Counted from the stretch's first letter, positions 8,195 to 55,616 are shown. The stretch: DNA of 64,000 nt from Tubulanus polymorphus (GCF_964204645.1 NC_134036.1:5362600-5426599), one strand, 5' to 3'. Translations and numbers: made by a program. Notes: generated by a model not told the origin, from the letters alone.

Positions 8195-11100
8195 ATGTTG
8201 TTCGGTATGGAGCAGCGACTGAGAGCGCTGTTTATAGCGACGCTGATCGTCTGTCAAGTTCACATCGCGCGCACCGATCGAGCCGACTCTATCGAGGAAT
8301 CGTCTGTGACGGTAAGTTCGTCTTGTAACAACACGTGGTACCCGCTAGATTCTACGTCCGGTTACATCGTTTCACCGAATTACCCGGCGTTAACGCGCGG
8401 TGTTGAATGTCGTTGGTTCATCAACAGCTCTTTACCTAAGACTTTCAACGTCCAAGTTTACTACAACATCGAACCGTCAATATTCTGTAGTGATAACTAC
8501 TTTCTCGTCTACGAGTATGATAACAGATTGTGCGGCGATGGAAAATATGAAATCCGCCGTAACGATTCGATCTCGTTGATGTTTAGGAGTAACGTCGATG
8601 GTGCGCGAGGTAGTCTGGTTTATATCACATATCGTTATGAACGAAGCCGATTGAGAATCAGTCATAACGGCAGGAAATATAATTGCGATTTGAATAAATT
8701 GCAAACGTCGGAGGGATACAAATACAAAATAAAAAGGCTAGTGGGTTGCCGGTTGTACCTGGAATGGATCGGGATGCCTGATGGTTTTGCTCTTAACTTG
8801 ACTTTTACAAAATTAGATTACAGAATATCCTCTCTCATTGCACCAATAACAGTCAACGACGGATCGAACATCAGCAGTGAACCTATAGGTATTATACGAG
8901 AACAAACCGGATATCCACCTTCGTCATTTTATACTAAAACAAATAAAGCCATAATCTCGTCGCTACATCGCCCAAGGGTGTTTCGATCGCAGCTTTTAGT
9001 TCAGAAGTACAAAATATCAGATTGGAACGTTTCTAATCCGTTGATTCAGATCTCTAATAACGAGTCGGGAGTGCTTATACCCGATGACAACAGTTTACAC
9101 GTGATAACTCGATCAAAACACTTACACTGCTGGTCCATCACAGTGCAGGTGTTACAGTACGTCGTCTTCAACTGGACACGTGATCTAGTCTCGTCCGGTG
9201 ACGTCATCGGTGTATATATACAAGAAGGGCTACGCTTTGTGGGAACTGATATCTTACTCGGATACAACTACATGGAATCACTGAGTGTCAAATCTGACGG
9301 CTTTCTTGTTGTACTATGCGCTCTGAAAGCTACACTTCACGATAATGTAACATTTGAAATAAACTATAAAAAAGAATTTATTTCGATGGAGAACATAAAG
9401 GTCTTCAACCCTCGGGTGAGTTAAATGCGTGAAATTATTTTACTCCGTATCAAAATAATTGAAGTAAACAAATATTTATGATGCACTTAAAATGGGCTTT
9501 TTATGTCTAGGTATCGGTGAACGCAATGTGGTCCATGACGCCGTTCATGCTGTTTCCAACACGAGCAAAGCTCTATTTGAATTATCGCATCAATAGATGC
9601 GAGTTTAAATGGAAAACTGAGATTTATGAACAGAATATGGAACTAACAGTTTTATCAGAGAACTGCGAGCGAGCTGGATTTTACATATTCGACGGTGGTA
9701 ATTTCACGGCTAGACGATACGGTCCGTATTGTCCTCGTTTATGGAGATACGGCCGTAACGTCGTCAGTCTGATTACATCAGGTGGATCGGTTACTGTAGT
9801 GGGATACGCTTATAACTGGGATGATCAATTAACAGTTGATAAGAAATCACGCCTCACATTTCGTACTACCGACTGTGATGGGTATGTCTTAAAGGAGGGA
9901 GAACGTCGGATCAACACGTCGTCTGACTGCGTTTCGATAACACCTGAAAACCGACGCCTTCCGTTAAAAAACATTTACATTTGGTCCAAACACGAATATC
10001 TACTTGATTCTTGTATTGTCGATGAAAGGTTCCACACCAGTAGGTGCATGTTTCGACTCAACTTCCATTCTACCAATAACGGACTTGTTTTACAAACGGT
10101 GGATTTTAGGTATGTAAGACCCTTCCGCGTGGAGCCGTTGTTTGTGAAACTACGCCGTAAATGTATGACATTGAAAACGCCCGATAAGCTCACAGATATA
10201 ACATGGCACACACCGGAATGCGGGTTAGTGCAGTCAATGAACTATCCCGGACCAGAATTCGACGAATCAGTCCGTAGAAAATACACTTTAGAATTCAGAC
10301 CTAATCTGTTACAGATTCGATTTTACAGATTCGTTTTCAAATACATTCAGGTAATACCCTGCGAGAAATCGTCCCGGAGAGATAGGGATCCTATTTTGTT
10401 TATACAAAATATATATCATTACATAACTACCGGGCGTGTAGAGACTCAATACACAACAACAATATGCGGTAAAATGGCCGTATTGGGAACTGTATTTTAT
10501 AGCTTGCATCACAAGATGCACTGGTTTCAGGTGGAAAATAATATACCCACATTTCAAATACAATACACCGTTATACGGTCTTTACAAGCGACACAGTTTG
10601 AAAATGTCTGTAAATCAGGATTTCTAGATTCGGGACTTTCCTGCGTAAAATACATCAGAGATGAACGTTTGAATTGGGAGAATGCTGAATTGTATTGTAG
10701 ACAGAAGTACGCGGGACATCTACTCAGTATCAACTCGGAACAGGAAATGATTCACATTAAAATATTATTCGCTACAAAGTTTCTTCAAAAGGCGTATTCA
10801 CAAAAAGCGCTCATAATGATGATTGGATTAAAACTGCAGGTAAATTTCAAAACCGTTGTTAAGTTCTATTTTTGTAAATATATTGTTCCAGAAGTTTATG
10901 CTTTTTTGTTTCGTAGCCCAATACCGGTTATTACACGTGGTCAGATGGGAAACCATTAAGCTACACAGAGTGGTATAAACCTACAAATAACGACACGATA
11001 CCAGAAGTTATTCAAGGATTGATATCTCCTCTCAGAAAACAACCGATCAATGACGTCAATATGCCGTGCACAGCGATGATACTGAATAATCCACGAGGAT

Positions 11101-14100
11101 CAGCGAACTGGGTTCGATTCCCCTGCAAAATCGAAGAGGTTCACACGAGTTTCATCTGTGAAACAGAAATAATCGATATCGAAAATAGAACATCTAGCAC
11201 GATAAATTCAACAAACAATGGCAAATCTTTGATACGGGAAAACATGTCGAAAGAAAGTAGTTGCACGGTTGGATGGTTAGGTATGAATAAACAATGCTAT
11301 CAAATACTGACAGACTGGAAAAAACATCGAGGTTTGGATATAAAAACTGCGACAGAGATGTGTCGAGACATCCGAGGTGAAATAGGCGCGATAACTGGTT
11401 ACACAGAAAAGAAAACATTGAACTTGATAAGAACATTTCAATATCAACATCAATATGGTTCTATACTAACGATGACTCCTGATGACAGACTGCATGTTAT
11501 AAACCCAATAATCACTAGAGATGAAATTACTTATATTCAATCAGTCAAATGGACGATGAAACAGTTTGATAATGCAACAGATACAGCGCATTCTGTTTTG
11601 TGTTCTTACAATGTAACTGATGAAGAGTTAGCTTCTATAAGCGGTTGTAAATCGTGGCAGTTTAAATGTAACGATCAAAGGTGTATCAGCGACCATCACG
11701 TATGTGATACCAGACACGACTGTCAACACGGGGAAGATGAACTCAATTGTACGGATATCGATTTACACAGTCAGTTTCAATGCAAAGATGGTCAGATTAT
11801 ATCAATAAGTGGATTCTGTGATTTCATACAAGATTGTGCGGATGGTTCCGATGAGAACTCGTGTTTTCATCCCCCGTGTTTGTCCGGAGAATTCCGCTGT
11901 ATCAGTGGTCAATGCGTCATCAGGTCAAAGAGATGTGACGGTGTTGCTAATTGTAAAGACGGATCAGATGAAATCGATTGCACTGCTGAAATGTGTCAGG
12001 GGTTTCTGTGTAACAGTGGAGACTGTATCAGTTCTCAATTGTATCAGGATGGTGTCGTGGATTGTAGTGGAAACCTCGAAGAAGATGAATTAGTAACAAC
12101 TACTAATGTTACAGTGAATCCTACTGTTCGTTGTAATAATGAAAACGACTGTGCGACTAACTTCACAAATCTCTGTACAGAATCAGATGATCAAAGGTGT
12201 TCTTTCGATTCTCCTCATTGTTATTCGAGACGTCACAGATGTATTCTAGAAAGAATGACGAATGGTTTCCCAGTTTGTAGAAATCTTGAGCACGTGTTGA
12301 GATGTGAAGAATTTGAATGTCCAGCTGGCACTGTCAAATGTCCAGCATCATACTGTATACCAATCAGAAAGGTGTGCGATGGTCGATCAGATTGTCTCAA
12401 TTCAGAAGATGAACAAAACTGTGAGACTCTTTCATGTTCGGGAATGTTTAAATGCGTCCACGAAAACCGATGTATTCCACAATCTGAAGTTTGCGATGGC
12501 GTCATACATTGTAAACATTCAACTGATGACGAGGCTTTCTGTAACGTGAAATGTCGTGAAGGTTGTTACTGTCAAGGTCATATGATCGATTGTAGAAATA
12601 CCGGTTTAACGAACATTACCGGTCTTTTCTCAGCCTCAACTCGAGTTTTGATTTTATCAAATAATGAATTAACCTTAGAAACGTCGACATTCTTTTCATA
12701 TGTATATTTGCGCATGATCAACATCTCCTTTACCAGATTGTCTTATTTATTACCAAACTCGTTCTCAAACTTGCATAATCTTCATACATTGGACCTGACA
12801 TACAACAACATAACATCATTAACCGCAAATACATTCACTGGTCTGTATAGTTTGAGAGAGTTATTCATAACTGAAAATCCGTTGCGTCAATTAGAGGATG
12901 ATACATTCCGAGATTTGAAGTCCCTGAAAAATCTCGACCTACACGGACTTAGGTTGTTGGTGCTTGATAGAAATGTATTTCGCGGTTTATCTACATTACA
13001 GTCGTTGAATATCAGCGGTAACAGAATCCATCATATTTCGCTTTACGCATTTTCTGGATTAACTTCACTTGAAATTCTTGATATTACCAACAACTACAAA
13101 GTTATTTCTGTCGACCGAAATATTTTAATTAATCTTAATTCATTGGTCTCCCTAATTTCTGACGATTACAAATTTTGCTGCATGGCTCCAAACATTGACT
13201 ACTGCCTTCCTGAAGCTGATCAATTTTCCTCGTGTTCTGATCTGATGGGTAACACAGTCCTCAGAGCTATCATTTGGGTCATCGCTTCATTCAGTTTTAT
13301 CGCTAACGGAATTGTCATTTCTCTTCGTATTCAAGCGATACGATTTTCCCCCTCAAATCTCTCTTCAGACATCATCATCATTAATGTTGCTTTGTGTGAT
13401 TTTATGATGTCTATTTATTTGTTTCTGATCGCTGGAGCCGATTATCTTTATAAAGATGATTACTTTCTCTATTCCGAATCATGGACAGACAGTTTGTTTT
13501 GTCGTCTTGCTGGGATCACGGTGTCTATTTCATGTGAAGGTTCATTGATGTTTTTGCTCATCATGACACGTCATAGGTTCACGAATATCTTAAATCCATT
13601 TTCAGGAAGTGCAATTACATCTACGAAATATGTGTGTATTATTTGTTGTACATGTTGGATTGTCTTGTGTGTCATTGTATTAGTACCTCTCACACCTTTC
13701 CCTTACTTTGGAGACAATTTCTACGGCACGACCGGAGTTTGTTTACCGATGAATTTGATTTCAATCGATGTGAATGCCTGGCAATATTCTTTCGCTATTT
13801 TTGCTATGTTTAACTCTGGCATACTTGCAACGATAATGGCGACTTATGCGCAAATGTACAGACTCGTATCTGGAAGCAGGTCTGTTTCTGGTAGAGTTGA
13901 TCCTACCGAACTGATTCTGGCGCGCAGGAGTTTGGTGATAAATCTGTGTAATCTATTTTGCTGGCTGCCGTTAATAACCGTTCAGTTTTGCGCGGTATTT
14001 CGGGTGGAAATACCGAATCAGGTGGCGGCTTGGCTGGCGGTTCTTTTCTTACCGATCAACTCGTCCCTCAATCCCCTTCTTTACACAATACTGACTATCG

Positions 14101-14156
14101 ATATGAAGTCCATACGAGCAAAAACAAAACGCAGGCAACATCGAACGAATAAATGA
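8195..14156 (+). CDS. GRL101-like: Copy 2: CUB/CTLD-extended GRL101-like GPCR, 3 exons, ~1929 aa
   Basis: Exons 8195-9415, 9511-10839, 10917-14156. Intron 1 is 9416-9510 (cgg|GTGAGT...tgtctAG, 95 bp); intron 2 is 10840-10916 (cag|GTAAAT...tttcgtAG, 77 bp). Both are phase 0. Splicing restores a continuous CTLD (IGLKLQ|PNTGYYTWSDGKPLSYTEW). Hydrophobic leader MLFGMEQRLRALFIATLIVC. Confidence 0.9.
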
Positions 14157-14745
14157 AATAGCGCAGAGTGTTTGGTATATATCGCCAGTCAAAACGATGT
14201 TTCGATCTTATTTCCTGTCGGGGATATTTCATGATAAATCATCATTATATACACTAGACTCCCCCCCCCTTATTTTTGCGTTGTTCACCTCTCACCGTTT
14301 TTTTTTCACATGCAATGAATTCGTTACATTTATTACATTCGTTACAATTACTGGATATCATTAACGTGTCAATATATGCAATGGATATATGGGGTATTTA
14401 TCGTTACACACGGGTCACAGCTTTCAATTCCGGTCGCTGTATCTCCTATACACTCAACACTCAATTGAAGCACTCCTGGTTAAAACTATTTCAGTACTGA
14501 CCATAAACCCACCGACCGTACTCAGACAGAAATTCTCCGGGTGATTAAACAAAACCGCCGGTAAAGAGATACTGTAAGTGTTACTAAAGGGGTACTGTAC
14601 CCACAGTAGGGCACTATAGCTGGTTACAAAAATATATGTTCATGCTTATTATATGGGCACCTTGGTGACCTAAATAATAAATGATAAAATGCGAATATCC
14701 AACCTATTGCTATACATAGCCTGCTTTTCTTTTCTGCAGTGTGTT

Positions 14746-14859
14746 CAGGACCCAGTTCCACAGTCGTGAGTTAGAGTTAACCCTGATTTAAAGTTAGTTC
14801 ATTTTCAATGAGTTAAACCAGAGTCAAATCTTAACTCAGAATTGTGGAACTGGGGCCTG
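14746..14859. mobile_element. MITE A (114 bp), spacer 2
   Basis: TIR CAGGACCCAGTTCCACA / TGTGGAACTGGGGCCTG (16/17 match, extending to ~30 bp with GAGTTA/TAACTC). Absent from the homologous empty sites GTGTT-CTG-ATGATT at 3461 and 56109. Confidence 0.8.
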
Positions 14860-19400: not shown

Positions 19401-19596
19401 CGGGTAAGGTCTAGTCGTTTTGAGTGGATGGGGTTTAATGATTGTATGGATAGAACATATAGTAATGAGTGAATAAACCAAAACTGGAATAAATGCAAAA
19501 AATAAGAACGTCTTTATCCTGTTGCGTTTTCATGGGTTGAATTTGCAACGTACGCATTTATGCTGAAATATTTGAAGCATTTTGGACTCGACGGAG

Positions 19597-19697: not shown

Positions 19698-22600
19698 ATG
19701 GAGCAGCGACTGAGAGCGTTGTTTATAGCGTCGCTAATCGTCTGTCAAGTTCGCATCGCGCGCGCTGATCGCGCAGACTCTATCGAGGAATCGTCTGTGA
19801 CGGTAAGTTCGTCTTGTAACAACACGTGGTACCCCGTAGATTCTACGTCCGGTTACATCGTTTCACCGAATTACCCGTCGTTAACGCACGATGTTGAATG
19901 TAGTTGGTTCATGAACAGCTCATTACCGGGAACTTTTCACGTCCAAGTTTACTACGATTTCGAGCCGTCAATATTCTGTAGTGATAACTACCTTCTCGTC
20001 TACGAGTCTGATAACAGATTGTGCGGCGATGGAAAATATGAAATCCGCCGTGACGATTCGATCTCGTTGATGTTAAGGAGTAACGTCGATGGTACGCGAG
20101 GTAGTCGGGTTTATGTTATATATCGTTATGAACGAAGCCGATTGAGAATACGTCACAACTGCAGGGAAAGAAATTACAATTTGAATGAATTGCAAACGTC
20201 GAAGGGATACAAATACAGTATAGGATATCTAGCGCAATGTCGGTTGTACCTAACATGGAAGGGGATGCCCGATTATTTCGCTTTTAACTTGACTTTCCAG
20301 AAGTTAGACTACAGAACATCCTCTATTTTTCCAGCTATAACAGTCCACGATGGATGGAACATCAGCAGTGAACCTATAGGTATTATACGAGAACAAACCG
20401 GATATCCACCTTCCTCATTTTATACTAATACAAATAAAGCCGTAATATCATCGCTTCGTCGCCCACTGATCTTTCGATCACAGCTTTTAGTTCAGATGTA
20501 TAAAGTATCAGATTGGAACGTCTCTAATCCGTTGATTCAAATCGCTAAAAACGAGTCGGGAGTGCTCATACCCGATGACAACAGTTTACACGTAATAACT
20601 CGATCAAAACACTTACACTGCTGGTCTATCACAGCGCAGGTGTTACAGTACGTCGTCTTCAACTGGACACGTGATCTAGTCTCGTCCGGTGACGTCATCG
20701 GTGTATATAAACAAGAAGGGTTACGCGTTGTGGGAACAGATATCTTACTCGGGTACAACTACCTGGAATCACTGAGTGTCAAATCTGACGGCTTTCTTGT
20801 TGTACTATGCGCTCTGAAAGCTACACTTCACGATAATGAAACATTTGAAATAAACTATAAAAACGAATTTATTTCGATGGAGAATATAAAGGTCTACAAC
20901 CGGGTGAGTTAAAATGCGTGAAATTATTTTACTCCGTATCAAAATAATTGAAGTAAAAAAATATTTATGATGCACTTAAAATGGGCTTTTTATGTCTAGG
21001 TACCGGTGAACGCAATGTGGTCCATGAGGCCGTTCATGCTGTTTCCAACACGAGCAAAGCTCTATTTGAATTATCGCGTCACTAGATACGAGTTGAAAAG
21101 GAAAACTGAGATTTATGAAGAGAATATGGAACTAACAGTTTTATCAGAGAACTGCGAGCGAGCTGGATTTTACATATTCGACGGTGGTAATTTCACGGCT
21201 AGACGATACGGTCCGTATTGTCCTCGTTTAAAGAAATATGACCGTCACGTCGTCAGTCTGATTACATCAGGTGGGCCGGTTACTGTAGTAGGATACGCTT
21301 ATAACTGGGAGGGTCAGTTAGCAGTCGATTCGCGCCTGACATTTCGTACTACCGACTGTGACGGGTATGTTTTAAAGGAAGGAGAACGACAGATCAACAT
21401 GACGTCACACTGTCTCGTGATTACACCCGAAAACCGACGCCTTCCGTTAAAAAACATTTACATTTGGTCCAAACACGGATATGTACTTGATTCTTGTATT
21501 ATCGACAAAAGATTCCCGATCGATAGATGCATGTTTCGACTGAAACTCCAGTCTACCAATAACGGTCTTGTTTTACAAACGGTGGATTTTAAGCTAGTAA
21601 GACCCTTCCGCGTGGAGCCGTTGTTTGTGAAACTACGCCGTAAATGTATGGCCATGAAAAAGCCCGATAAGCTCACAGATATGACCTGGCAAACACCGGA
21701 ATGCGGGTTAGTGCAGTCAATGAACTACCCCGGACCAGAATACTACGAATCAGTCCGTAGAAAATACACTTTAGAATTCAGGACTAATCAGTTACAGATT
21801 CGATTTTACAGATTCGTTTTCAAATACATTCAGGTAATACCCTGCGAGAAATCGTCCTGGAGGGATAATGATCCTATTTTGTTCATACAGAATCCATATT
21901 ATTTCATAACAACCGGGCGACGTGTAGAGACTCGACACACGACCAAAATATGTGGTAAAATGGCCGTTTTGGGAACTGTTTTTTATAGCTTGCATCACGA
22001 GATGCACTGGTTTCAGGTGGAAAATAATATACCAACCTTTCAAATACAATACACGGTTATTCAGTCATTATTAGAGAAACAGATGAAAAATGTCTGTAAA
22101 TCAGGATTTCTAGATTCGGGAATTTCATGCGTAAAATACATCAGAGATGAACGTCTGACTTGGGAGAATGCTGAATTGTATTGTAGACAGAAGTACGCGG
22201 GACATCTACTCAGTATCAACTCACAACAGGAAATGATTTCTATTAAAAGATTATTCGCTACAAAGCTTCTTCTAAAGGCATATTCACAGAAAGCGCTCAT
22301 AATGATGATTGGATTACAACTGCAGGTAAATTTGAAACACCGTTCGTAAGTTCTATGTTTGTAAATATAATGTTAATTCTTTTTTTGTTTCGTAGCCCAA
22401 TACCGGTTATTACACGTGGTCAGATGGGAAACCATTAAGCTACACAGAGTGGTATAAACCTACAAATAACGACACGATACCAGAAGTTATTCAAGGATTG
22501 ATATCTCCTCCCAGGAAACAACCGATCAATGACGTCAATATGCCGTGTACGGCGATGATGCTGAATAATCCACGAGGATCAGCGAACTGGGTTCGATTTC

Positions 22601-25600: not shown

Positions 25601-25632
25601 AAACTAAACGCAGGCTTCATCGAAAAGATTGA
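19698..25632 (+). CDS. GRL101-like: Copy 3: CUB/CTLD-extended GRL101-like GPCR, 3 exons, ~1922 aa
   Basis: Exons 19698-20903, 21000-22325, 22396-25632. Introns 20904-20999 (96 bp) and 22326-22395 (70 bp), GT-AG, phase 0. Start placed at the second conserved ATG (MEQRL) because the first is ACG. Ends RLHRKD. Confidence 0.88.
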
Positions 25633-34500: not shown

Positions 34501-34563
34501 ACTATCGATATGAAATCCATACGAGCAAAAACTAAACGCAGGCAACATCGAACAGATAAATGA
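28562..34563 (+). CDS. GRL101-like: Copy 4: CUB/CTLD-extended GRL101-like GPCR, 3 exons, ~1935 aa
   Basis: Exons 28562-29785, 29902-31227, 31306-34563. Introns 29786-29901 (agg|GTAAGT...atttAG, 116 bp) and 31228-31305 (cag|GTAATG...ttacAG, 78 bp), phase 0. Confidence 0.88.
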
Positions 34564-40030: not shown

Positions 40031-43000
40031 ATGTTGTTCGGTATGGAGCAGCGACTGAGAGCGCTGTTTATATCGTCGCTGATCGTCTGTCGAGTTCGCA
40101 TCGCGCGCGCTCATCGCGCAGACTCTATCGAGGAATCGTCTGTGACGGTAAGTTCGTCTTGTAACAATACGTGGTACCCGCTAGATTCTACGTCCGGTTA
40201 CATCGTTTCACCGAATTACCCGTCGTTAACGCGCGGTGTTGAATGTCGTTGGTTCATCAACAGTTCCTTACCGGGAACTTTCTTCATCCAAACGAAATTC
40301 GATATTGAGCTGTCGGTATTCTGTAGTGATAACTACTTTCTCGTCTACGAGTCTGATACCAGATTCTGTGGTGATGGAAAACATGAAATTCGCCGTAACG
40401 AATCGATCTCGTTGATGTTTAAGAGTAACGTCGATGGCACGCGAGGCAGTCGGGTTTATGTCATATATCGTTATGATCGAAGTCGATTGAGAATCAGCCA
40501 CGGATGCGAGATCCGGAATTTTAAAGTGCATGAATTGAAAACATCGACCGGATACAAATTCACGATGTTCTTTCATCACCGATGTCAGCTGTTCTTCGAA
40601 TGGAACGGCATCCCGGATGGTTTTGCTATGAATTTCACATTCGTTGATCTGGACCTTAAACTATATTATTTCGATGTCGTCGATCCAGCGGTGAATTTTC
40701 GTATCTATGATGGCTGGAACATCAGCAGTGAGCCGATAGCGCTCATGGGTGCACAGAGCGGACAACAGCCGTCATCGTTTTATACCAAAACAAACAAGGC
40801 ATTGATTTATGTGTTAAATCAACGCAAAACAAGGACTGAACTTTTAGTACAAATTTATAAAATATCAGATTGGAACGTCTCTAATCCGTTGGTTCAGATC
40901 TCTAATAACGAGTCGGGAGTGCTCATTCCCGATGATAACAGTTTACACGTAGTAACTCGATCGAAACACCTACACTGCTGGTCTATCACAGTGCAGGTGT
41001 TACAGTACGTCGTCTTCAACTGGACACGTGATCTCGTCATATCCGGTGACGTCATCGGTGTATATAAGTTAGAAGCGTTGCGCGTTGTGGGAACTGATAT
41101 TTTACTCGGTTACAACTACCTGGAATCACTGAGTGTTAAATCTGACGGCTTTCTCGTCATGCTGTGTGTTTTAACGAGACCGAACATCACGGAATCGATT
41201 CTAAGGATAGACTTCAGAATGAAATCAATATCGATGTCTAAATTGCGCATCATTCTACCCAGAGTAGGTATCAGATCATTGATGCACTCATATTTACACT
41301 CCATCGACGGAGATTCGCAGCTATGATTACTAACGAAATGAATTATTCTTTTGCTCAAATATATAGATAGACAACAGATTCAAACTGTCTACGAAGTCGA
41401 TGGGATTTTTTTCGCTGCTTCCATTTCCAACAAGGAAGTTGAATTATCGCGTCAGCCTGTACAGATTCAAATGGAAAGTTGAAATCTACGACAGCGATCT
41501 ACAATTGAAAATGGTGTCTGTGAATTGTGAAAATACCGGATACTACATATACGACGGTGGTAATTTCACGGCTAGACGATACGGTCCGTATTGTCCTGGT
41601 TCATCGGGTTATCGACGAAGTGTCGTCAGTCTGATTACATCAGGCGGCTCGGTCATCGTAGTAGGCTATATTTATAACAGTCGAAGCAAGCAACGGATGG
41701 CCAGCGGATCTTTAAAGTTACGTCCGACCGACTGTGACGGTTATACTCTGCGCGAAGGAGAAAACCGGGTAACAATGCAGAAGCCACGCTGTTTCAGAAT
41801 TACACCAGAAAACCGAGCAGTTTTACTACATAAAATTCACATATTATCACAGCGCGAATATGAGATCAGCGGATGCAGGCGCGATAACATAACATCGCGC
41901 ACAACATGTAGATATGAAATGCGTCTCAGTATTCAGCGTCTCAATAACAGTCTCGTACTGCACACTGTCACATTCCGGAAGGCGAATTTTATCTGGATAG
42001 GACCGTACTTCGTCGAATTGCGGCGCATTTGCCAAACATTGAGAAAACATGACGAAAAATTTAACTGGAGGGAAGGAACTGAAGGCGATTGCGGAATCGT
42101 GCAGTCACCAAACTACCCAGGGTCATCTAACCCGTTATCCGTTACGTTGGAATACTGGATCAAATTCCAAAATGTTCTGACCCGAATTCACTTTTACCGA
42201 TTCGTCATCAAAACAATGGAAAAGACGTCTTGTATTAAAGAATCCAGATACAAACTGGAGTCCGTCGCGTTCGTCCAGGAAGTAAGTTACCAGAGCCGCA
42301 CTGCCCGACACGTAATCAAAATATGCGAAACGTTTGCTGAACCGGGAGTTACGTTTTACAGTTATATCAATATTAAGATGCGCATCGAGGTGAAAAACCG
42401 AGTACCCAAATTTCGCATACAGTACGTACTAGAGGAACAGTTACCAATAAAACAGATTGAAAATGTCTGTAAAACAGGATTTATTGATACGGGAATCACT
42501 TGCGTAAAATACATCAGCGATAAACGTCTGAATTGGGAGAATGCTGAATTGTACTGTAGACAGAAGTACGCGGGACATCTACTCAGTATCAACTCACAAC
42601 AGGAAATAATGTCTATTAAAACATTATTCTCTACAAGGCCGCTCATCTCAGATGTGTATTCGCGGAAAGCGTTCATAATGATGATTGGGTTAAAACTGCA
42701 GGTACAGTTCTGTATTCTAGGTCAAAACCTTAACTGTATATAGAACACATTCGTAAATATATCAGGGTTACATTTTCAGCTTGTAAATAGTTATTACACG
42801 TGGACTGATGGAAAACCATTGAGCTACACAGAGTGGTATGAACCTACAAATAACGACACGATACCAGAAGTTATTCGTGGATTGATATCTCCTCTCAGAA
42901 AACAACCCATAAATGACGTCAATATGCTGTGTACGGCGATGATACTGAATAATCCACGCGGATCAGCGAACTGGGTTCGATTCCCCTGCGGAATCGAAGA

Positions 43001-46000
43001 GGTTCACACGAGTTTCATTTGCGAATCGGACAGAATAAGTGTCAAAAATTTAGCTGAGAGAGAAAGCAACTCAACCAATAAGGCGTCATCAGAAACTAAT
43101 AAACAACACATTTTTAATTATGATACAGTAAATGCAACTTGTACAATGGGTTGGTTAGGTATAGATGGGCAATGTTACCAAATACTGACAGATTGGAACA
43201 AAAACCGAAGTTTAGATATAGGGAAATCAAGAAAACTGTGTCATGGAATCCGCGGTGAAGTCGGTTTGATACAGGATCTGATGCACCTTCAAATATTGAT
43301 TGGTCGATTTAATTATCGGCACCACTATGGCGCTATTCTAACTAAGGGTTTTTGGAATCAGTGGTTGAAAATAAAACCATTTGTTACCAGGGATGAAATT
43401 ACTTATAATCATTCGATTAATTGGGCATTGATACCGTGGCATAATCAATCAGATACAGCGCATTCCGTTCTGTGTTCATACAATGTAACTGACGAAGAGT
43501 TAACTTCTATAAGCGGTTGTAAATCGTGGCAGTTTGAATGTAACGATCAAAGATGTATCAGTGACCATCGCGTATGTGACACCAGACACGACTGTCGACA
43601 CGGTGAAGATGAAATTAATTGTACGGATATAAATTTACACAGTCAGTTTCAATGTAATGATGGACAGATTATATCAGTAAGTGGTTTCTGTGATTTCATA
43701 CAGGATTGTGTGGATGGTTCTGATGAAAACGCATGTTTTCATCCTCCGTGTTTGTCCGAACAATTTCGCTGCCAAAGTGGTAAATGTATCAGTATTTCTA
43801 ACAGATGCGATGGATTCACTAATTGTAAAGACGGCTCCGATGAAATTGGATGCACTTCTCAAATGTGTCAAGGATTCCTGTGTAACAGTGGAGACTGTAT
43901 CAATTCTCAATTGTATCAGGATGGTGTCGTAGATTGCAGTGGAAGCCTCGAAGAAGATGAATTAGTAACAGCTACTAATGTTACAGTGAATCCTACTGTT
44001 TATTGCAACAATGAGAACCACTGTACCACTAACTTCACTAATTTCTGCATTGAATCTGACGAACAAAGATGTTCTTTCAATTCTCCTCATTGTTATTCAA
44101 GACGTCACAGATGTATTCTAGAAAGAATGACAAATGGTTACCCAGTTTGTAGAAATCTTGAGCACGTATTGAGATGTGAAGAATTTGAATGTCCAGCTGG
44201 TACTGTAAAATGCCCAGCATCGTATTGTATACCGATCAGACAGCTGTGCGATGGTCAGTCAGATTGTCCTAACTCAGAAGATGAACAAAACTGCGAGACG
44301 TTTTCATGTCCGGGAATGTTTAAATGCGGCCACGAAAATCGATGTATCCCACAATTTGAAGTTTGCGATGGTGTCATAAGTTGTAAACATAAAACTGATG
44401 ACGAGGCTTTCTGTAACGTAACCTGCCGTGAAGGTTGTATGTGTCAAGGTTATTTGTTCGATTGCCGAAATGCTGGTTTAACAAATATTACCGATCTTTT
44501 TTCGGCATCAACTCGTGTCTTAATTTTGTCGAATAACGAAATTACATTAGACATGTCGACATTCCTTTCATATATCTATTTGCGCATGCTCAACATCTCT
44601 TCCAATGAATTGTCTAATATTTTACCTAAATCGTTCTCAAACCTGCATAATCTACATACATTAGATCTTACACACAACAACATAACATCATTATCTGCAA
44701 AAACATTCATCGGTTTGTATAGTTTGAAAGAGTTATTGATTACTGAAAATCCAATACGTCATTTACAGGACGATACCTTCCAAGATTTGAAGTCACTTAA
44801 AGTTCTCGACCTTCACGAACTTTCGTTGTTGGTGCTTGGTAGAAACGTATTTCGAGGTTTATCTACATTACAGTCGTTGAATATCAGCAATAACAGAATC
44901 CATCATATTTCGCTTTACGCATTTTCTGGATTAACTTCACTTGAAATTCTTGATATAACCAACAACCACAAAGTTATTTCTGTCGACAGAAATGTTTTCA
45001 ACAATCTGACATCATTAGTCTCCCTTATGTCTGACCATTACAAATTTTGCTGCATGGCTCCGAATAATGACCAGTGCCTTCCCAAAGCTGATGAATTTTC
45101 CTCCTGTTCTGATCTGATGGGTAACACAGTCCTCAGAGCTATCATTTGGGTCATCGCGTCATTCAGTCTTATCGCGAACAGTATTGTCATTTCTCTGCGC
45201 GTTCGTGCGATTCGATCATCCCCTTCAAATCCATCTTCCGATATCATCATCATTAATGTCGCTGTGTGTGATTTTATGATGTCTATATATTTGTTTCTGA
45301 TCGCTGGAGCCGATTATCTTTATAAAGATAATTACTTTCTCTATTCCGAATCGTGGACGGACAGTTTGTTTTGTCGTCTTGCTGGGATCACGGTGTCTGT
45401 TTCTTGTGAAGGTTCATTGATATTTTTGCTTATCATGACACGTTATAGGTTCACAAATATCTTAAATCCATTTTCAGGAAGTGCAATTACATCTCCCAAA
45501 TATGTGTGCATTATTTGTTGCACATGTTGGATTGTCTTGTGTGTCATTGTATTAGTACCTCTTACACCTTTCCCTTACTTTGGAGACAATTTCTACGGCA
45601 GTACAGGAGTTTGTTTACCGATGAATTTGATTTCAATCGATGTGAATGCCTGGCAATATTCATTCGCTATTTTTGCTGTGTTTAACTCTGGCATACTTGC
45701 AACGATAATGGCGACTTATGCGCAAATGTTCAGACTCGTATCAGGAAGCAGGTCTGGTTCTGGTAGAGCTGATCCTACCGAATTGGTTTTGGCACGCAGG
45801 AGTTTGGTGATAAATCTTAGTAATCTATTTTGCTGGCTGCCGTTAATAACCGTTCAGATTTGCGCGGTATTACGGGTAGAAATACCGAATCAGGTGGCGG
45901 CTTGGCTGGCGGTTCTTTTCTTACCGATCAACTCGTCCCTCAATCCCCTTCTTTACACAATACTGACTATCGATATGAAATCCATACGAGCAAAAACTAA

Positions 46001-46025
46001 ACGCAGGCTTCATCGAAAAGATTGA
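40031..46025 (+). CDS. GRL101-like: Copy 5: CUB/CTLD-extended GRL101-like GPCR, 3 exons, ~1937 aa
   Basis: Exons 40031-41263, 41367-42701, 42780-46025. Intron 1 is 41264-41366 (aga|GTAGGT...atatAG, 103 bp; a donor/acceptor pair both shifted +4 would also keep frame). Intron 2 is 42702-42779 (78 bp). Ends RLHRKD. Confidence 0.86.
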
Positions 46026-49528: not shown

Positions 49529-49618
49529 CGAATTTTCTGATTGGATGAAATCGGATCGTGATCCGACCAATGACAGATTCTGTGAAACTTGATGAATTTC
49601 GTTCATTCTGTCGCAGTG
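49529..49618 (+). promoter_or_regulatory. Putative core promoter of copy 6
   Basis: ATTGG at 49540, CCAAT at 49567, TCATTC downstream. Confidence 0.5.
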
Positions 49619-52600
49619 ATGTTGTTCGGTGTGGAGCAGCGACTGAGAGCGCTGTTTATTTCGTCGCTGATCGTCTGTCAAATTCGCATCGCGCGCGCTG
49701 ATCGCGCAGATTCTATCGAAGAATCGTCTGTGACGGTAAGTTCGTCTTGTAACAATACGTGGTACCCGCTAGATGTTACGTCCGGTTACATCGTTTCACC
49801 GAATTACCCGTCGTTCACGCGCGGTGTTGAATGTCGTTGGTTCATCAACAGTTCTTTACCAGGAACTTTCTTCATCCAAACGAAATTCGATATCGAGCCG
49901 TCAATATTCTGTAGTGATAATTACTTCCTCGTCTACGAGTCTGATAACAGATTCTGTGGTGATGGAAAACATGAAATTCGCCGTAACGATTCGATCTCGT
50001 TGATGTTTAAGAGTAACGTCGATGGCGCACGAGGTAGTCGGGTTTATGTCATATATCGTTATGATCGAAGTCGATTGAGAATCAGCCACGGATGCGGGAT
50101 CTGGAATTTTAAAGAGCACGAATTGGAAACATCGACCGGATACAAATTCACGATGTTCTTTCATCACGGATGTCAGCTGTTCGTCGAATGGAACGGCATC
50201 CCGGATGGTTTTGCTATGAATTTAACATTCGTTGATCTGGACCTTAAACTATATTATTTCGGTGGCGTCGATCCAGCGGTGAATTTTCGTATCTATGAAG
50301 GCTGGAACATCAGCAGTGAGCCGATAGCGCTTATAGGTGCACAGAGCGGACAACAGCCGTCATCGTTTTATACCAAAACAAACAAGGCATTGATTTATGT
50401 GTCAAATCAACGCAAAACAACGACTAAACTTTTAGTACAGATTTATAAAATATCAGATTGGAACGTATCTAATCCGTTGATTCAGATCTCTAATAACGAG
50501 TCGGGAGTGCTCATTCCCGATGACAACAGTTTACACGTAATAACTCGATCAAAACACTTACACTGCTGGTCTATCACAGTGCAGGTGTTACAGTACGTCG
50601 TCTTCAACTGGACACGTGATCTCGTCATATCCGGTGACGTCATCGGTGTATATAAGTTAGAAGCGTTGCGCGTTGTAGGAACTGATATTTTACTCGGTTA
50701 CAACTACCTGGAATCACTGAGTGTCAAATCTGACGGCTTTCTCGTCATGCTGTGTGTTTTAACGAGACCGAACACCACGGAATCGATTCTAAGGATAGAC
50801 TTCAGAATGAAATCAATATCGATGTCTAAATTGCGCATCATTCTACCCAGAGTAGGTATCAGATCATTGGTGCACTCATATTTACACTCCATCGACGGAG
50901 ATTCGCAGCTATGATTACTAACGAAATGAATTATTCTTTTGCTCAAATATATAGATAGACAACAGATTCAAACTGTTTACAAAGTCGATGGAATCTTCTT
51001 CGCTGCTTCCATTTCCGACAAGGAAGTTGAATTATCGCGTCAACCTGTACAGATTCAAATGGAAAGTTGAATTCTACGAACGAGATCTACAATTGAAAAT
51101 GGTGTCTGTGAATTGTGAAAATACCGGATACTACGTATACGACGGTGGTAATTTCACGGCTAGACGATACGGTCCGTATTGTCCTCGTTCATCGGGTTAT
51201 CGACGAAGTGTCGTCAGTCTGATTACATCAGGCGGTCCGGTCATCGTAGTAGGCTATATTTATAACAGTCGAAGCAAGCAACGGAGGGCCAGCGGATCTT
51301 TAAAGTTAGGTCCGACCGACTGTGACGGTTATACTCTGCGTGAAGGAGAAAACCGGGTAAGTATGCAGACGCCACGCTGTTTCAGGATTACACCAGAAAA
51401 CCGAGCAGTTTTACTATATAAAATTCACATATTATCACATCACGAATATGAGATCAGCGGATGCATGCGCGATCACACAACATCGCGCACAGCATGTAGA
51501 TATCAAATGCGTCTCAGTATTCAGCGTCTCAATAACAGTCTCGTACTGCACACTGTCGCATTTCGGAGGGCGGATTTTTTCTGGATAAGACCGTACTTCG
51601 TCGAATTGCGGCGAATTTGCCAAACATTGAGAAAACATGAAGCAATAGCTGACCGGTGGGAGCGAACTGAAGGCGATTGCGGAATTGTGCAGTCACCAAA
51701 CTACCCAGGGTCATCTAGAACTCTATCCGTCACGTTGGAATACTGGATCAATTTCAAAAATGTTAAGACCCGAATTCACTTTTACCGATTCGTCATCAAA
51801 ACAATGGAAAAGACGTCGTGTATTAAGGAATCCAGATACAAGCTGGAGTCCGTCGCGTTCGTCCAGGAAGTCAGTTACCAGAGCCGCACTGCCCGACACG
51901 TTATCAAACTATGCGAAACGTTTGCCGAACCGGGAGTTACGTTTTACAGTTATATTTTTATTAAGATGCGCTTCGAGGTGAAAAACCGAGTACCCAAATT
52001 TCGCATACAGTACGTACTAGAGGAACAGTTACCAATAAAACAGATTGAAAATGTCTGTAAAACAGGATTTATTGATACGGGAATCACTTGCGTAAAATAC
52101 ATCAGAGATAGACGTCTGAATTGGGAGAATGCTGAATTGTACTGTAGACAGAAATACGCGGGACGTCTACTCAGTATCAACTCACAACAGGAAATAATGT
52201 CTATTAAAACATTATTCTCTACAAGGCCGCTCATCTCAGATGTGTATTCCCAGAAAGCGTTCATAATGATGATTGGGTTAAAACTGCAGGTACAGTACTG
52301 TATTCTAGCCCATAACCTTAACTGTACATAGAACACATTCGTAAATGTCCGAGGGTTACATTTTCAGCTTGTAAGTGGTTATTACACGTGGACTGATGGA
52401 AAACCATTGAGCTACACAGAGTGGTATCAACCTACAAATAACGACACGATACCAGAAGTAATTCAAGGATTGATATCTCCTCTCAGAAAACAACCGATAA
52501 ATGACGTCAATATGCCGTGTACGGCGATGATATTGAATAATCCACGAGGATCAGCGAACTGGGTTCGATTCCCCTGCGGAATCGAAGAGGTTCACACGAG

Positions 52601-55600
52601 TTTCATTTGCGAATCGGACAGAATAAGTGTCAAAAATTTAACTGAGAGAGAAAGCAACTCAACCAATAAGGCGTCATCCGAAACTAATAAACAACACATT
52701 TTTAATTATAATACAGTAAATGCAACTTGTACAATGGGTTGGTTAGGTATAGCTGGGAAATGTTACCAAATACTGACAGATTGGAACAAAAACCGAAGTT
52801 TAGATATTGGGAAATCAAGAAAACTGTGTCATGGAATCCGCGGTGAAGTCGGTTTGATACAGGATCTGATGCACCTTCAAATATTGATTGGTAGATTTAA
52901 TTATCGGCACCACTATGGCGCTATTCTAACTATCGGTTTTTGGAATCAATGGTTGAAAATAAAACCATTTGTTACCAGGGATGAAATTACTTATGATCAT
53001 TCGATTGACTGGGCATTGATACCGTGGTATAATCAATCAGATACAGTGCATTCTGTTCTGTGTTCATACAATGTAACTGATGAAGAGTTAACTTCTATAA
53101 GCGGTTGTAAATCGTGGCAGTTTGAATGTAACGATCAAAGATGTATCAGCGACCATCGCGTATGTGACACCAGACACGACTGTCGACACGGTGAAGATGA
53201 ACTTAATTGTACGGATACAAATTTACACAGTCAGTTTCAATGCAATGATGGACAGATTATATCAGTTAGTGGTTTCTGTGATTTCATACAGGATTGTGTG
53301 GATGGTTCTGATGAAAACGCATGTTTTCATCCTCCGTGTTTGTCCGAACAATTTCGCTGCCAAAATGGTCAATGTATCAGTATTTCTAAGAGATGCGATG
53401 GATTCACTGATTGTAAAGACGGCTCCGATGAAATTGGATGCACTTCTCAAATGTGTCAAGGATTCCTGTGTAACAGTGGAGACTGTATCAGTTCTCAGTT
53501 GTATCAGGATGGTGTCGTAGATTGCAGTGGAAGCCTCGAAGAAGATGAATTAGTAACAGCTACTAATGTTACAGTGAATCCTACTGTTTATTGCAACAAT
53601 GAGAACCACTGTACGACTAACTTCACTAATTTCTGCATTGAATCTGATGAACAAAGATGTTCTTTCAATTCTCCTCATTGTTATTCAAGACGTCACAGAT
53701 GTATTCTAGAAAGAATGACGAATGGTTACCCAGTTTGTAGAAATCTCGAGCACGTGTTAAGATGTGAAGATTTTGAATGTCCAGCTGGTACTGTAAAATG
53801 TCCAGCATCGTACTGTATACCGATCAGACAGGTGTGCGATGGTCAGTCAGATTGTCCTAATTCAGAAGATGAACAAAACTGCGAGACGTTTTCATGTCCG
53901 GGAATGTTTAAATGTGGCCACGAAAATCGATGTATCCCACAATTTGAAGTTTGCGATGGTGTCATAACTTGTAAACATAAAACTGATGACGAGGCTTTCT
54001 GTAACGTAACCTGCCGTGAAGGTTGTGTGTGTCAAGGTTATTTGATCGATTGCCGAAATGCTGGTTTAACAAATATTACTGATCTTTTCTCGGCATCAAC
54101 TCGAGTTTTAGTTTTGTCGAATAACGAAATTACCTTAGACATGTCGACATTCCTTTCATATATCTATTTGCGCATGCTCAACATCTCTTCCAATGAATTG
54201 TCTAATATTTTACCTAAATCGTTCTCAAACCTGCATAATCTACAGACATTAGATCTTACACGCAACAACATCACATCATTATCTGCAAATACATTCATCG
54301 GGTTGTATAATTTGAAAGAGTTATTGATTACTGAAAATCCAATACGTCATTTAGAGGACGAAACCTTCCAAGATTTGAAGTCACTTAAAGTTCTCGACCT
54401 CCACGAACTTTCGTTGTTGGTGCTTGGTAGAAACATATTTCGAGGTTTATCTTCATTACAGTCGTTGAATATTAGCAGTAACAGAATCCATCATATTTCG
54501 CTTTACGCATTTTCTGGATTAACTTCACTTGAAATTCTTGATATAACCAACAACTTAAAAGTTATTTCTGTCGACAGAAATGTTTTCCACAATCTGACAG
54601 CATTGGTCTTCGTAAAGTCTGATGCTTACAAATTTTGCTGCATGGCTCCGAATGTTGACACGTGCCTTCCTGAAGCTGATCAATTTTCCTCCTGTTCTGA
54701 TCTGATGGGTAACACAGTCCTCAGAGCTATCATTTGGGTGATCGCTTCATTCAGTTTTATCGCTAACGGAATTGTCATTTCTCTTCGCATTCGAGCGATT
54801 CGATTTTCCTCCTCAAATCCTTCTTCAGACATCATCATCATTAATATCGCTGTGTGTGATTTTATGATGTCTATATATTTATTTCTGATCGCTGGGGCTG
54901 ATTATACTTATAAAGGTATCTACTTTCTCAATTCAGAATCATGGACGGACAGTGCATTTTGTCGTCTAGCTGGAGTCGTGGTCACTATTTCTTGTGAAGG
55001 TTCGTTAATGTTTTTGCTCATCATGACACGTCATAGATTCTCAATTATAGTTAATCCATTTTCTGGAAGCCCGATTACATCTCCGAGATATGTGTGCATC
55101 ATTTGTTGCACATGTTGGATCGTTTTGTGTGTTATTGCATCGCTACCTCTTACGTCTATCTCTTACTTTGGGGACAATTTCTATGGCAGAACTGGAGTTT
55201 GTTTACCAATGAATTTAATTTCAATTGACGTCAACGCCTGGCAATATTCATTCGCTATTTTTTCATTATCCAACTCATTCATACTCGCTACGATAATGGC
55301 GACTTATACGCAATTGTACCGACTCGTATCTGGAAGTAGGTCTGGCTCGGGTCGAATTGACCCTACAGAACTAGTTTTGGCACGCAGGAGTTTGGTGATA
55401 AATCTTTGCAATTTATTTTGCTGGCTGCCGTTAATTATCGTTCAGTTTTGCGTGGTATTTCGGGTAGAAATACCGAATCAGGTGGCGGCTTGGCTGGCGG
55501 TTCTTTTCTTACCGATCAACTCGTCCCTCAATCCCCTTCTTTACACAATACTGACTATCGATATGAAATCCATACGAGCAAAAACTAAACGCAGGCAACA

Positions 55601-55616
55601 ACGAACGGATAAATGA
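49619..55616 (+). CDS. GRL101-like: Copy 6: CUB/CTLD-extended GRL101-like GPCR, 3 exons, ~1938 aa
   Basis: Exons 49619-50851, 50955-52289, 52368-55616. Introns 50852-50954 and 52290-52367. All splice sites sit exactly 9588 bp from those of copy 5. The second conserved ATG is GTG here. Confidence 0.86.

What the first reader, a model, noticed from the sequence alone, without database searches (positions are those of the whole stretch)
8195..55616. Tandem family of ~1,930-aa CUB-CTLD-LDLa-LRR-7TM receptors hidden as three separate ORFs
Seen: each unit's three ORFs join in frame through canonical phase-0 GT-AG introns at homologous positions in six copies, and intron 2 falls mid-CTLD. The result is one protein with a leader, 2 clear CUBs (SGYIVSPNYP; CG.VQS.NYPG), ~3 degenerate CUB-like modules, 2 CTLD-like domains, LDLa repeats, LRRs and a 7TM. 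Established: LDLa+LRR+hinge+7TM defines type C LGRs (RXFP1/2-related, and the Lymnaea orphan receptor GRL101); the canonical forms lack a ~1,000-aa CUB/CTLD extension. Inference: CUB, CTLD and LRR modules stacked on a GPCR, with at least 7 copies and no disabled complete copy, point to a lineage-expanded pattern-recognition or chemosensory receptor system. I cannot tell without a search whether this architecture has been described.
Basis: partly seen in the sequence, partly recalled or inferred. Interest (0 to 1): 0.88.

Follow-up and report, generated by a model that had tools for sequence, protein, structure and literature searches.

The report
Giant GRL101-type receptor gene array
The window holds seven tandem copies (five complete) of a three-exon ribbon-worm gene for a roughly 1,930-residue G-protein-coupled receptor, real and intact, but of a receptor type and tandem expansion already reported in snails and present in databases for flatworm, abalone and amphioxus.

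Summary
Five complete units, one copy cut by the window start and one cut by its end share the same three exons. The exons join through phase-0 GT-AG introns of 70-120 nt at homologous positions, and no readable part has a stop.

Exon 3 encodes at least 4-6 LDLa modules, LRRs, a Cys-rich hinge and a rhodopsin-type 7TM. Its best solved match is RXFP1 and its best named database matches are "GRL101-like". Exon 1 has one solid CUB. Intron 2 splits a C-type lectin domain, and both halves match known CTLDs. A second CTLD follows. A second CUB is only weakly supported, and the "three degenerate CUB-like modules" are not shown.

Splicing support is comparative only; no RNA run was available.

The layout is not new. 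Macrostomum, amphioxus and abalone proteins have CUB and/or CTLD with LDLa-LRR-7TM. Tandem GRL101-like expansions are published for apple snails and Biomphalaria (CTL-LDL-LRR-GPCR).

This scan found the same family earlier on other DNA of this genome.

- The public Tubulanus polymorphus gene model covers only exon 3.
- The DRY acidic residue is replaced by H or Y.
- The N-terminal ectodomain has about twice the replacement:silent ratio of the core, but pN/pS stays below 1.

Function is inferred: a diversified sensor repertoire.

The parts
2..2959 (+). U0: exon 3 of an upstream copy, cut by the window start (985 aa: LDLa, LRR, 7TM, stop)
   Evidence: Ldl_recept_a 2.9e-34, LRR_8 5.8e-31, 7tm_1 9.7e-19
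8195..9415 (+). U1 exon 1 (407 aa): leader, CUB at aa 44-147, about 260 aa of unassigned beta-rich modules
   Evidence: cubilin CUB E 8e-16
9416..9510 (+). U1 intron 1 (95 nt, GTGAGT...TAG, phase 0)
9511..10839 (+). U1 exon 2 (443 aa): unassigned modules, a weak CUB at aa 236-362, N-terminal half of CTLD1 at aa 366-443
10840..10916 (+). U1 intron 2 (77 nt, GTAAAT...TAG, phase 0), inside CTLD1
10917..14156 (+). U1 exon 3 (1079 aa + stop): C-terminal half of CTLD1 (1-82), CTLD2 (about 107-235), LDLa modules (244-542), LRRNT and LRRs (546-745), Cys-rich hinge (748-780), 7TM (785-1060), short tail
19698..20903 (+). U2 exon 1 (homologous ATG at 19698; an in-frame ATG also at 19623)
21000..22325 (+). 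U2 exon 2
22396..25632 (+). U2 exon 3
28562..29785 (+). U3 exon 1 (Pfam CUB 31.9 bits, above the gathering score)
29902..31227 (+). U3 exon 2
31306..34563 (+). U3 exon 3
40031..41263 (+). U4 exon 1 (Pfam CUB 25.1 bits)
41367..42701 (+). U4 exon 2
42780..46025 (+). U4 exon 3
49619..50851 (+). U5 exon 1
50955..52289 (+). U5 exon 2
52368..55616 (+). U5 exon 3
60804..62030 (+). U6 exon 1
62150..63502 (+). U6 exon 2
63578..64000 (+). U6 exon 3, first part (start approximate, after ...TTTTCAG); open to the window end
2960..8149 (.). Spacer of the long type (also 14157-19616, 34564-39997, 55617-60758). The short type is at 25633-28528 and 46026-49585. Spacers are homologous between units, so whole units were duplicated

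Best explanation
The window is part of a tandem array of intact paralogous genes for giant type C (GRL101-like) leucine-rich-repeat GPCRs of a ribbon worm, most likely Tubulanus polymorphus or a close relative. Each gene has three exons and encodes a signal peptide, a CUB domain, about 600 residues of fast-evolving beta-rich modules (at least one more is probably a CUB), two C-type-lectin-like domains, about 5-6 LDLa modules, an LRR block, a Cys-rich hinge and a rhodopsin-type 7TM. Whole units of 9-11.5 kb were duplicated and then exchanged segments, which gives a mosaic of shared and divergent blocks. Inferred mechanism: the variable CUB/CTLD end captures a ligand. The conserved LDLa-LRR-hinge-7TM part transduces the signal to a G protein, as the LDLa and LRR modules do in RXFP1. 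The array serves as a diversified repertoire of sensors for external cues; I lean towards chemosensory over immune. Shown: gene structure, domains, family placement, intactness, and purifying selection with a less constrained N-terminal end. Inferred: splicing in vivo, expression, ligand class and signalling.
For: Gene structure: conserved phase-0 GT-AG introns in six copies, and in 2.5 further units at 53-70% protein identity in a T. polymorphus locus. Exon joining: the Macrostomum protein P0146 aligns colinearly with exon 2 up to ...IGLK (its residue 950) and with exon 3 from YTWSDG (983) through to the 7TM, at 30% identity and E 3e-150. The two CTLD halves sit on either side of intron 2. 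Domains: LDLa 1.6e-35, LRR_8 7.6e-27, 7tm_1 6e-17; CUB. Family: RXFP1 is the best solved GPCR (7.7e-70, against 2e-28 for FSHR). 'GRL101-like' proteins are the best named hits. In the tree the window copies plus the Tubulanus protein form one clade (SH-aLRT 100). Selection: dN/dS is 0.23-0.65 in every exon and pair. The replacement:silent ratio is about 2.1-2.2 times higher in the N-terminal ectodomain than in the LDLa-LRR-7TM core (Fisher p 0.0016 and 9e-5). Large family: 1135 contig pieces at 95% identity or more lie on 6 kb in one public run, piled on the conserved blocks. Sensor precedent: apple-snail GRL101 genes are expressed in tentacles and labial palps (PMC6573481), and Biomphalaria CTL-LDL-LRR GPCRs lie in a schistosome-resistance region (PMC12297450).
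Against: There is no transcript evidence: the only runs that hold the stretch look like DNA, cover the introns and show no spliced joints. No 25-codon window has pN > pS, so diversifying selection is not shown, and relaxed constraint would explain the pattern equally well. AlphaFold2 models of the exon 1 and exon 2 products failed (pLDDT 26 and 28), so about 500 residues have no assigned fold. CTLD1 lacks the WND motif by my reading of the sequence (it reads W-V-R), so canonical Ca2+-dependent sugar binding is doubtful. The acidic residue of the DRY motif is replaced by H or Y, so G-protein coupling may be unusual.
Confidence: 0.55

Rival explanations
1. Immune pattern-recognition repertoire: the CUB/CTLD end binds microbial or parasite surface molecules, and the receptors act on immune or epithelial cells rather than in sensory organs.
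For: CTLD and CUB are common in invertebrate immune recognition proteins. A cluster of 12 CTL-LDL-LRR GPCRs lies in the SudRes2 schistosome-resistance region of Biomphalaria sudanica. GRL101 genes are up-regulated in resistant B. glabrata. The N-terminal ectodomain is less constrained than the core.
Against: No pN > pS signal. CTLD1 lacks WND. There are no expression data. In SudRes2 the validated variants lie in a neighbouring Zn-RING-IAP gene, not in the GPCRs.
Confidence: 0.25
2. Endocrine receptors: like the single-copy GRL101/LGR5 orthologues, these bind an insulin/IGF/relaxin-like peptide through the LRRs and LDLa modules.
For: The LRR and 7TM are closest to RXFP1 and GRL101-like proteins. 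Veenstra proposes IGF-like ligands for GRL101 (PMC8286064).
Against: Single-copy conservation is the rule for the endocrine orthologue. Here there are 7 copies in 64 kb and evidence for many more. They carry an extra ectodomain of about 1,100 aa that diverges fastest.
Confidence: 0.08
3. A recently amplified segment with little or no function: the ORFs stay open only because the copies are young or are homogenised by gene conversion.
For: Whole units including spacers were duplicated. dS is mosaic, for example 0.05-0.1 over most of U4-U5 but 0.30 in the 7TM, which points to sequence exchange. No RNA evidence.
Against: dS between copies reaches 0.3-1.6 while every exon stays open, and dN/dS is 0.23-0.65. 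Splice sites are kept in units only 53-70% identical. The architecture is conserved with a flatworm protein.
Confidence: 0.08
4. The three ORFs are separate genes, or are joined differently from the proposed model.
For: Only the lack of RNA data.
Against: Complementary CTLD halves lie across intron 2. The ORFs are colinear with one flatworm polypeptide. Exons 2 and 3 have no leader or start context of their own. The public 689-aa model covers exon 3 only and ignores homologous exons lying directly upstream.
Confidence: 0.03

Closest known systems
GRL101 of Lymnaea stagnalis and type C2 LGRs (arthropod LGR5, ambulacrarian GRL101)
   Same: Multiple LDLa modules, then LRRs, a Cys-rich hinge and an RXFP-like rhodopsin 7TM. 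'GRL101-like' proteins are the best named hits (35-38% identity in the 7TM).
   Different: The canonical forms are about 1,000-1,300 aa without CUB or CTLD and are usually single-copy. Here about 1,100 aa of CUB, unassigned and CTLD modules precede the LDLa block, and the genes are tandemly amplified. D/E3.49 is H or Y.
Biomphalaria sudanica SudRes2 GRL101-like GPCRs (PMC12297450)
   Same: CTL + LDL + LRR + GPCR architecture. A dense tandem cluster (12 genes in 440 kb) that automatic annotation under-called.
   Different: No CUB modules are reported there. Snail rather than ribbon worm. Here the units are far more compact (about 10 kb, three exons).
Ampullariid (apple snail) GRL101 expansion (PMC6573481)
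   Same: Lineage-specific tandem expansion of GRL101-family GPCRs (29-132 genes), read as environmental sensors.
   Different: The ectodomain architecture is not described there as CUB/CTLD. The expansion is independent: in my tree the window clade is separate from the mollusc clade.
Macrostomum lignano BOX15_Mlig009194 proteins (P0146, 2163 aa; uncharacterised)
   Same: CUBx2 - unassigned region - CTLD - CTLD-like - LDLa - LRR - 7TM. Colinear with exon 2 (aa 174-441, E 2e-12) and exon 3 (30% identity over about 1,100 aa, E 3e-150).
   Different: The exon-1 product has no significant BLAST match to it. It keeps DRY.
RXFP1 (human relaxin receptor, PDB 7TMW)
   Same: Best solved GPCR match, covering LRRs, hinge and 7TM (E 7.7e-70). 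An LDLa module lies N-terminal of the LRRs.
   Different: RXFP1 has one LDLa and no CUB or CTLD. It has a known peptide ligand and keeps the acidic residue of the DRY motif (the latter from my own knowledge, not tested here).

Membership tests
Type C LGR (RXFP / GRL101-like) | Rhodopsin-family 7TM closest to the RXFP/LGR receptors | tested here: met
   7tm_1 6e-17. RXFP1 7.7e-70, against FSHR 2e-28, LHCGR 8e-26 and TSHR 5e-23. GRL101-like and relaxin-receptor-like proteins are the top named hits.
Type C LGR (RXFP / GRL101-like) | LRR block followed by a Cys-rich hinge directly before TM1 | tested here: met
   LRR_8 7.6e-27. The hinge pattern FCC...C.P..D.(F/I)SSC.(D/N)L aligns with GRL101-like and RXFP-like proteins.
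Type C LGR (RXFP / GRL101-like) | LDLa module(s) N-terminal of the LRRs; several of them for subtype C2/GRL101 | tested here: met
   Ldl_recept_a 1.6e-35 with 4 significant stretches. Five to six Cys-pattern modules at aa 244-542 of exon 3.
Type C LGR (RXFP / GRL101-like) | Orthology to GRL101 proper (one clade with Lymnaea GRL101 / arthropod LGR5) | tested here: inconclusive
   The quick tree puts the window clade on a long branch. It groups weakly (SH-aLRT 82) with the amphioxus and Macrostomum CUB/CTLD receptors, not inside the mollusc or Palaemon GRL101-like rows. Lymnaea GRL101 itself was not on hand.
Type C LGR (RXFP / GRL101-like) | Activation by an insulin/relaxin-superfamily peptide | not testable with these tools
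   Needs receptor assays.
Class A GPCR signalling motifs | E/DRY at the end of TM3, CWxP in TM6, NPxxY in TM7 | tested here: inconclusive
   CWLP and NPLLY are kept and R3.50 is kept. The acidic 3.49 residue is H (U0, U1, U3, U5) or Y (U2, U4), and Q in the Tubulanus protein. All other aligned homologues have D or E, except one with N.
CUB domain (PF00431) | Match to the CUB profile above the curated cut-off | tested here: met
   Exon 1: 31.9 bits (U3) and 25.1 bits (U4) against a cut-off of 21.4; U1 20.5 and U2 19.3 fall just below. The paralogue profile matches cubilin CUB at E 8e-16. For the exon-2 module with the CG.VQS.NYPG motif: hhalign P 0.002 only.
C-type lectin-like domain (PF00059) | Match to the CTLD profile over the whole domain | tested here: met
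The domain is split by intron 2, so it was tested in halves. The exon-2 end matches DEC-205 at E 9e-13 and many snaclecs at residues 2-73. The exon-3 start matches mannose receptor residues 84-109 at E 1.6e-4. CTLD2 at aa 107-181 matches FcRY at 5e-10 and NKG2D at 6e-4.
C-type lectin-like domain (PF00059) | Ca2+/carbohydrate site (EPN or QPD plus WND) | tested here: not met
   By reading the sequence: Q-P-x-N-D stands where EPN/QPD would be, but W-V-R stands in place of WND in CTLD1. It is best called CTLD-like, and sugar binding should not be assumed.

The most novel reading that the evidence does not exclude
The array is one block of a family of several hundred genes that works as a GPCR-based diversified recognition system. 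Conserved blocks (leader/CUB1, one exon-1 module, the CTLD1 core, LDLa, the 7TM tail) are kept uniform by gene conversion. The intervening ectodomain blocks are shuffled between paralogues, and the loss of the DRY acidic residue tunes the whole clade towards altered, perhaps partly constitutive or non-canonical, signalling. The public annotation of the species has not captured this repertoire.
Probability: 0.2. Interest if true: 0.7.

Novelty: new member of a known kind. Interest (0 to 1): 0.4.

Why it matters
The window documents a compact, intact and apparently very large expansion of GRL101-type receptors in a phylum (Nemertea) where it is not described in the papers I could search. A 2025 survey of lophotrochozoan class A GPCRs reports large nemertean expansions but does not mention LDL, lectin or GRL101. 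The public gene model for a family member covers only exon 3, so protein-based surveys will miss or misclassify the family. The colinear flatworm protein, and amphioxus and abalone proteins with similar domain sets, suggest that CUB/CTLD-bearing type C LGRs are an old bilaterian subtype rather than a local invention. GRL101 itself is still an orphan receptor, so a family with hundreds of natural variants of the ectodomain on one transducer could help in finding what such receptors bind.

Tried and rejected
1. AlphaFold2 on the exon-1 and exon-2 products, each with a six-paralogue alignment, gave pLDDT 26 and 28. The models are unusable, so no fold search was run.
2. An exhaustive HMMER search of 1.84 billion representatives with exon 2 found no close relative. 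It returned only CTLD-half hits, one Macrostomum protein and one amphioxus protein.
3. Pfam on sub-pieces of exons 1-2 gave nothing beyond CUB1 and the CTLD half.
4. Profile-to-PDB searches and hhalign against a small CUB reference, and all-against-all between six putative modules, supported only CUB1 (70% probability). The exon-2 module at aa 236-362 was weakly supported (14%, P 0.002), so the internal CUB-repeat idea is not supported for the other four.
5. ESM-Atlas feature neighbours of the unassigned parts are CUB, CUB_2 and CRF-BP clusters at 0.85-0.92. I treat these as leads only.
The runs I laid behave as DNA (the introns are covered), and the four listed joints have non-canonical ends and single-contig support.
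7. A sliding-window test for pN > pS found no such window.
8. I looked in the spacers for the small Cys-rich (knottin-like) ORFs that earlier notes report beside such receptors elsewhere in the genome. None occurs in this window.
9. The spliced exons were never joined for any tool or script, so no whole-protein domain scan, fold or length-matched homologue search was done.


Full report
OBSERVATION

The window carries a repeating set of three + strand ORFs. By homology I placed the splice sites in every unit. Intron 1 starts directly after a conserved Arg codon (G|GTGAGT in U1 and U2, G|GTAAGT in U3, A|GTAGGT in U4-U6). It ends at a TAG or CAG in frame with the next ORF. Intron 2 starts after the codons for IGLK(L/K)Q (CAG|GTAAAT, GTACAG, GTAATG or GTAGAG). 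It ends 3-4 codons before Y(Y/F)TW(S/T)DG. All introns are phase 0, GT-AG and 70-120 nt long.

Five units are complete (U1-U5). U0 (2-2959) is an exon 3 cut by the window start. U6 (60804-64000) has exons 1 and 2 and the first part of exon 3, which stays open to the window end. No readable part has a stop.

The spacers are also homologous between units, in a long form of about 5.3 kb and a short form of about 3 kb. Whole units of 9-11.5 kb were therefore duplicated.

IS THE SPLICED MODEL REAL?

I could get no transcript evidence. The three runs that hold the stretch give short contigs that also cover the introns, and they show no joint at the predicted junctions. Support for splicing is therefore comparative, and it comes from three sources.

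- A profile of exon 2 (window copies, two units from another locus and a flatworm protein) matches the first 55-73 residues of many solved C-type lectin domains, and always stops at the exon end (DEC-205 E 9e-13). A profile of the start of exon 3 matches residues about 75-110 of such domains (mannose receptor E 1.6e-4). The two halves of one domain lie on either side of intron 2.
- The Macrostomum lignano protein P0146 (2163 aa) aligns with exon 2 aa 174-441, ending at its residue 950. It aligns with exon 3 aa 6-1074 from its residue 983 to 2078, at 30% identity and E 3e-150. One flatworm polypeptide is thus colinear with both exons.
- The Tubulanus polymorphus locus that encodes the best database hit (P0026) holds 2.5 further units with the same three exons. 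They are 53-70% identical in protein to U1, and their phase-0 GT-AG introns sit at essentially the same two positions, although the intron sequences differ.

No whole-protein scan or fold was made.

DOMAINS

Exon 3 is clear:
- Ldl_recept_a 1.6e-35 with four significant stretches, and 5-6 Cys-pattern modules at aa 244-542.
- LRR_8 7.6e-27.
- 7tm_1 6e-17.

Exon 1 begins with a plausible signal peptide (read by eye). It has one solid CUB at aa 44-147. Pfam gives 31.9 and 25.1 bits in U3 and U4, against a cut-off of 21.4, and just below the cut-off in U1 and U2. The paralogue profile matches cubilin CUBs at E 8e-16.

CTLD1 spans intron 2. A second CTLD-like domain lies at exon-3 aa 107-235 (FcRY 5e-10, PLA2R 5.5e-7, NKG2D 6e-4). 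By my reading of the sequence, CTLD1 has Q-P-x-N-D where EPN/QPD would stand, but W-V-R in place of WND. Canonical sugar binding should therefore not be assumed.

hhalign against a small CUB reference aligns 102 columns colinearly at P 0.002 and 14% probability. The motif is shared with the flatworm protein.

The other four putative modules (exon-1 aa 156-275 and 276-407; exon-2 aa 1-119 and 120-235) gave no signal with Pfam, PDB profiles or hhalign, and no signal against each other. Only language-model neighbours point to CUB, CUB_2 and CRF-BP clusters at 0.85-0.92, which is lead-level evidence. AlphaFold2 with six-row alignments failed (pLDDT 26 and 28).

FAMILY PLACEMENT

Among solved structures, RXFP1 is by far the best GPCR match and covers LRRs, hinge and 7TM (7.7e-70, against 2e-28 for FSHR). 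Among named proteins, 'GRL101-like' entries lead (Haliotis, Palaemon; 35-38% identity in the 7TM), followed by relaxin-receptor-like entries (about 30%).

The closest hit of all is a 689-aa 'uncharacterized protein' of Tubulanus polymorphus (67-74% identity in the 7TM). A quick maximum-likelihood tree puts the window copies plus this protein in one clade (SH-aLRT 100) on a long branch. That clade groups weakly (82) with the amphioxus and Macrostomum CUB/CTLD receptors rather than with the mollusc GRL101-like rows. Rooting and backbone are unreliable, so I call the proteins type C, GRL101-like LGRs. I leave orthology to GRL101 proper open.

The host is a ribbon worm. The same species as P0026 is likely but not proven here: the window and that locus are about 74% identical in exon-3 DNA, which fits divergent paralogues.

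7TM MOTIFS

CWLP and NPLLY are kept and R3.50 is kept. The acidic residue of E/DRY is H in U0, U1, U3 and U5, Y in U2 and U4, and Q in the Tubulanus protein. Every other aligned homologue has D or E, except one with N. The C-terminal tail is only about 20 residues.

EVOLUTION OF THE COPIES

Per-exon dN/dS is 0.23-0.65 for all pairs, so the copies are under purifying selection.

Divergence is strongly mosaic. For U1-U3, dS is 0.62, 1.47 and 0.37 in exons 1, 2 and 3. For U4-U5, pS is 0.05-0.1 over most of the gene but 0.30 in the 7TM. Blocks with low pN also have low pS. This fits sequence exchange between paralogues.

No 25-codon window has pN > pS. In the two youngest pairs, the replacement:silent ratio of the N-terminal ectodomain is about 2.1-2.2 times that of the LDLa-LRR-7TM core (Fisher p 0.0016 and 9e-5), but pN/pS stays at 0.36-0.68. 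The sensor end is therefore less constrained, and positive selection is not shown.

In the public runs, 1135 contig pieces of at least 95% identity lie on the 6 kb of U1. They pile up on the blocks that are most conserved among the window's copies (Spearman 0.47, p 0.008). This fits a family far larger than seven. Earlier notes of this scan give about 270-280 copies, which I did not verify.

WHAT IS KNOWN

The architecture is already in the databases:
- Macrostomum: CUBx2-...-CTLD-LDLa-LRR-7TM.
- Amphioxus 'GRL101-like/RXFP1': CUB-LDLa-SRCR-CTLD-LRR-7TM.
- Abalone 'GRL101-like': CUBx2-LDLa-LRR-7TM.

In the literature:
- Apple snails have 29-132 tandemly duplicated GRL101 genes, expressed in tentacles and labial palps (PMC6573481).
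- Biomphalaria sudanica has a cluster of 12 CTL-LDL-LRR GPCRs in a schistosome-resistance region, also under-annotated by the automatic pipeline (PMC12297450).
- Canonical GRL101 is an orphan receptor, proposed to bind IGF-like peptides (PMC8286064).
- A 2025 survey reports large class A GPCR expansions in nemerteans but does not mention LDL, lectin or GRL101 (PMC11886862).

This scan had already found the same family on other DNA of this genome. I used those notes as leads and checked what I could.

- Exact models for all seven copies.
- Proof that intron 2 splits a CTLD, from the two complementary halves.
- Colinearity with a flatworm protein.
- The public Tubulanus gene model (P0026) is a partial model covering only exon 3, with homologous exons 1 and 2 lying unannotated just upstream. 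This explains why exon 2 had no close hit among 1.84 billion representative proteins.
- The H/Y/Q substitution in the DRY motif.
- A quantified contrast between ectodomain and core, without pN > pS.
- No knottin-like ORF in this window's spacers.

VERDICT

The most likely function is a diversified sensor repertoire, with a variable CUB/CTLD end on a conserved RXFP-like transducer. My odds are:
- Chemosensory: about 0.3-0.35.
- Immune: about 0.25.
- Endocrine: about 0.08.
- Little or no function: about 0.08.

I file it as a new member of a known kind, with interest 0.4.

Noticed in passing
window 13470-13490 (U1 end of TM3, approximate) and the homologous sites in U0, U2-U5: The acidic residue of the E/DRY motif is H (U0, U1, U3, U5) or Y (U2, U4), and Q in the Tubulanus protein P0026. 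R3.50, CWLP and NPLLY are kept. All other aligned LGR homologues have D or E, except one with N.
   Followed up: partly
L001 7115-13348 and 15501-21886 (GCA_964204645.2, OZ123234.1:2797507-2820881): The public T. polymorphus locus of P0026 holds 2.5 tandem units with the same three exons. The annotated 689-aa product covers only exon 3, and exons 1 and 2 lie unannotated directly upstream.
   Followed up: yes
window 2960-6304 versus 55617-58959: The spacers after U0 and after U5 are 97.6% identical over 3.35 kb, although the flanking exon 3 copies differ at dS 0.35 and the other long spacers are only 80-87% alike. This suggests a recent conversion or a recently copied segment; I did not resolve which.
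   Followed up: no
window 45140-46025 versus 54730-55616 (7TM of U4 and U5, approximate): Between the otherwise near-identical U4 and U5 (pS 0.04-0.11 in every other part of the gene), the 7TM part has pS 0.30. It looks like a segment taken from a different paralogue.
   Followed up: partly
window 8190-14160 (depth table): Summed contig depth in the public runs swings from under 100 to over 20,000 along the gene. The peaks lie on the blocks most conserved among the window's copies, as expected if hundreds of paralogues share those blocks at 95% identity or more.
   Followed up: partly
window 6306-6592 and 7083-7171: A 147-bp tandem repeat (2 copies) and a (TA)44 microsatellite lie in the long spacer. 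No convincing ORF and no Cys-rich small ORF occurs in any spacer.
   Followed up: partly
window 19623-19700: U2 lacks the first of the two in-frame Met codons that the other copies have (it reads DVFGM in place of MLFGM), but it has another in-frame ATG 25 codons upstream. The true start is unknown.
   Followed up: no
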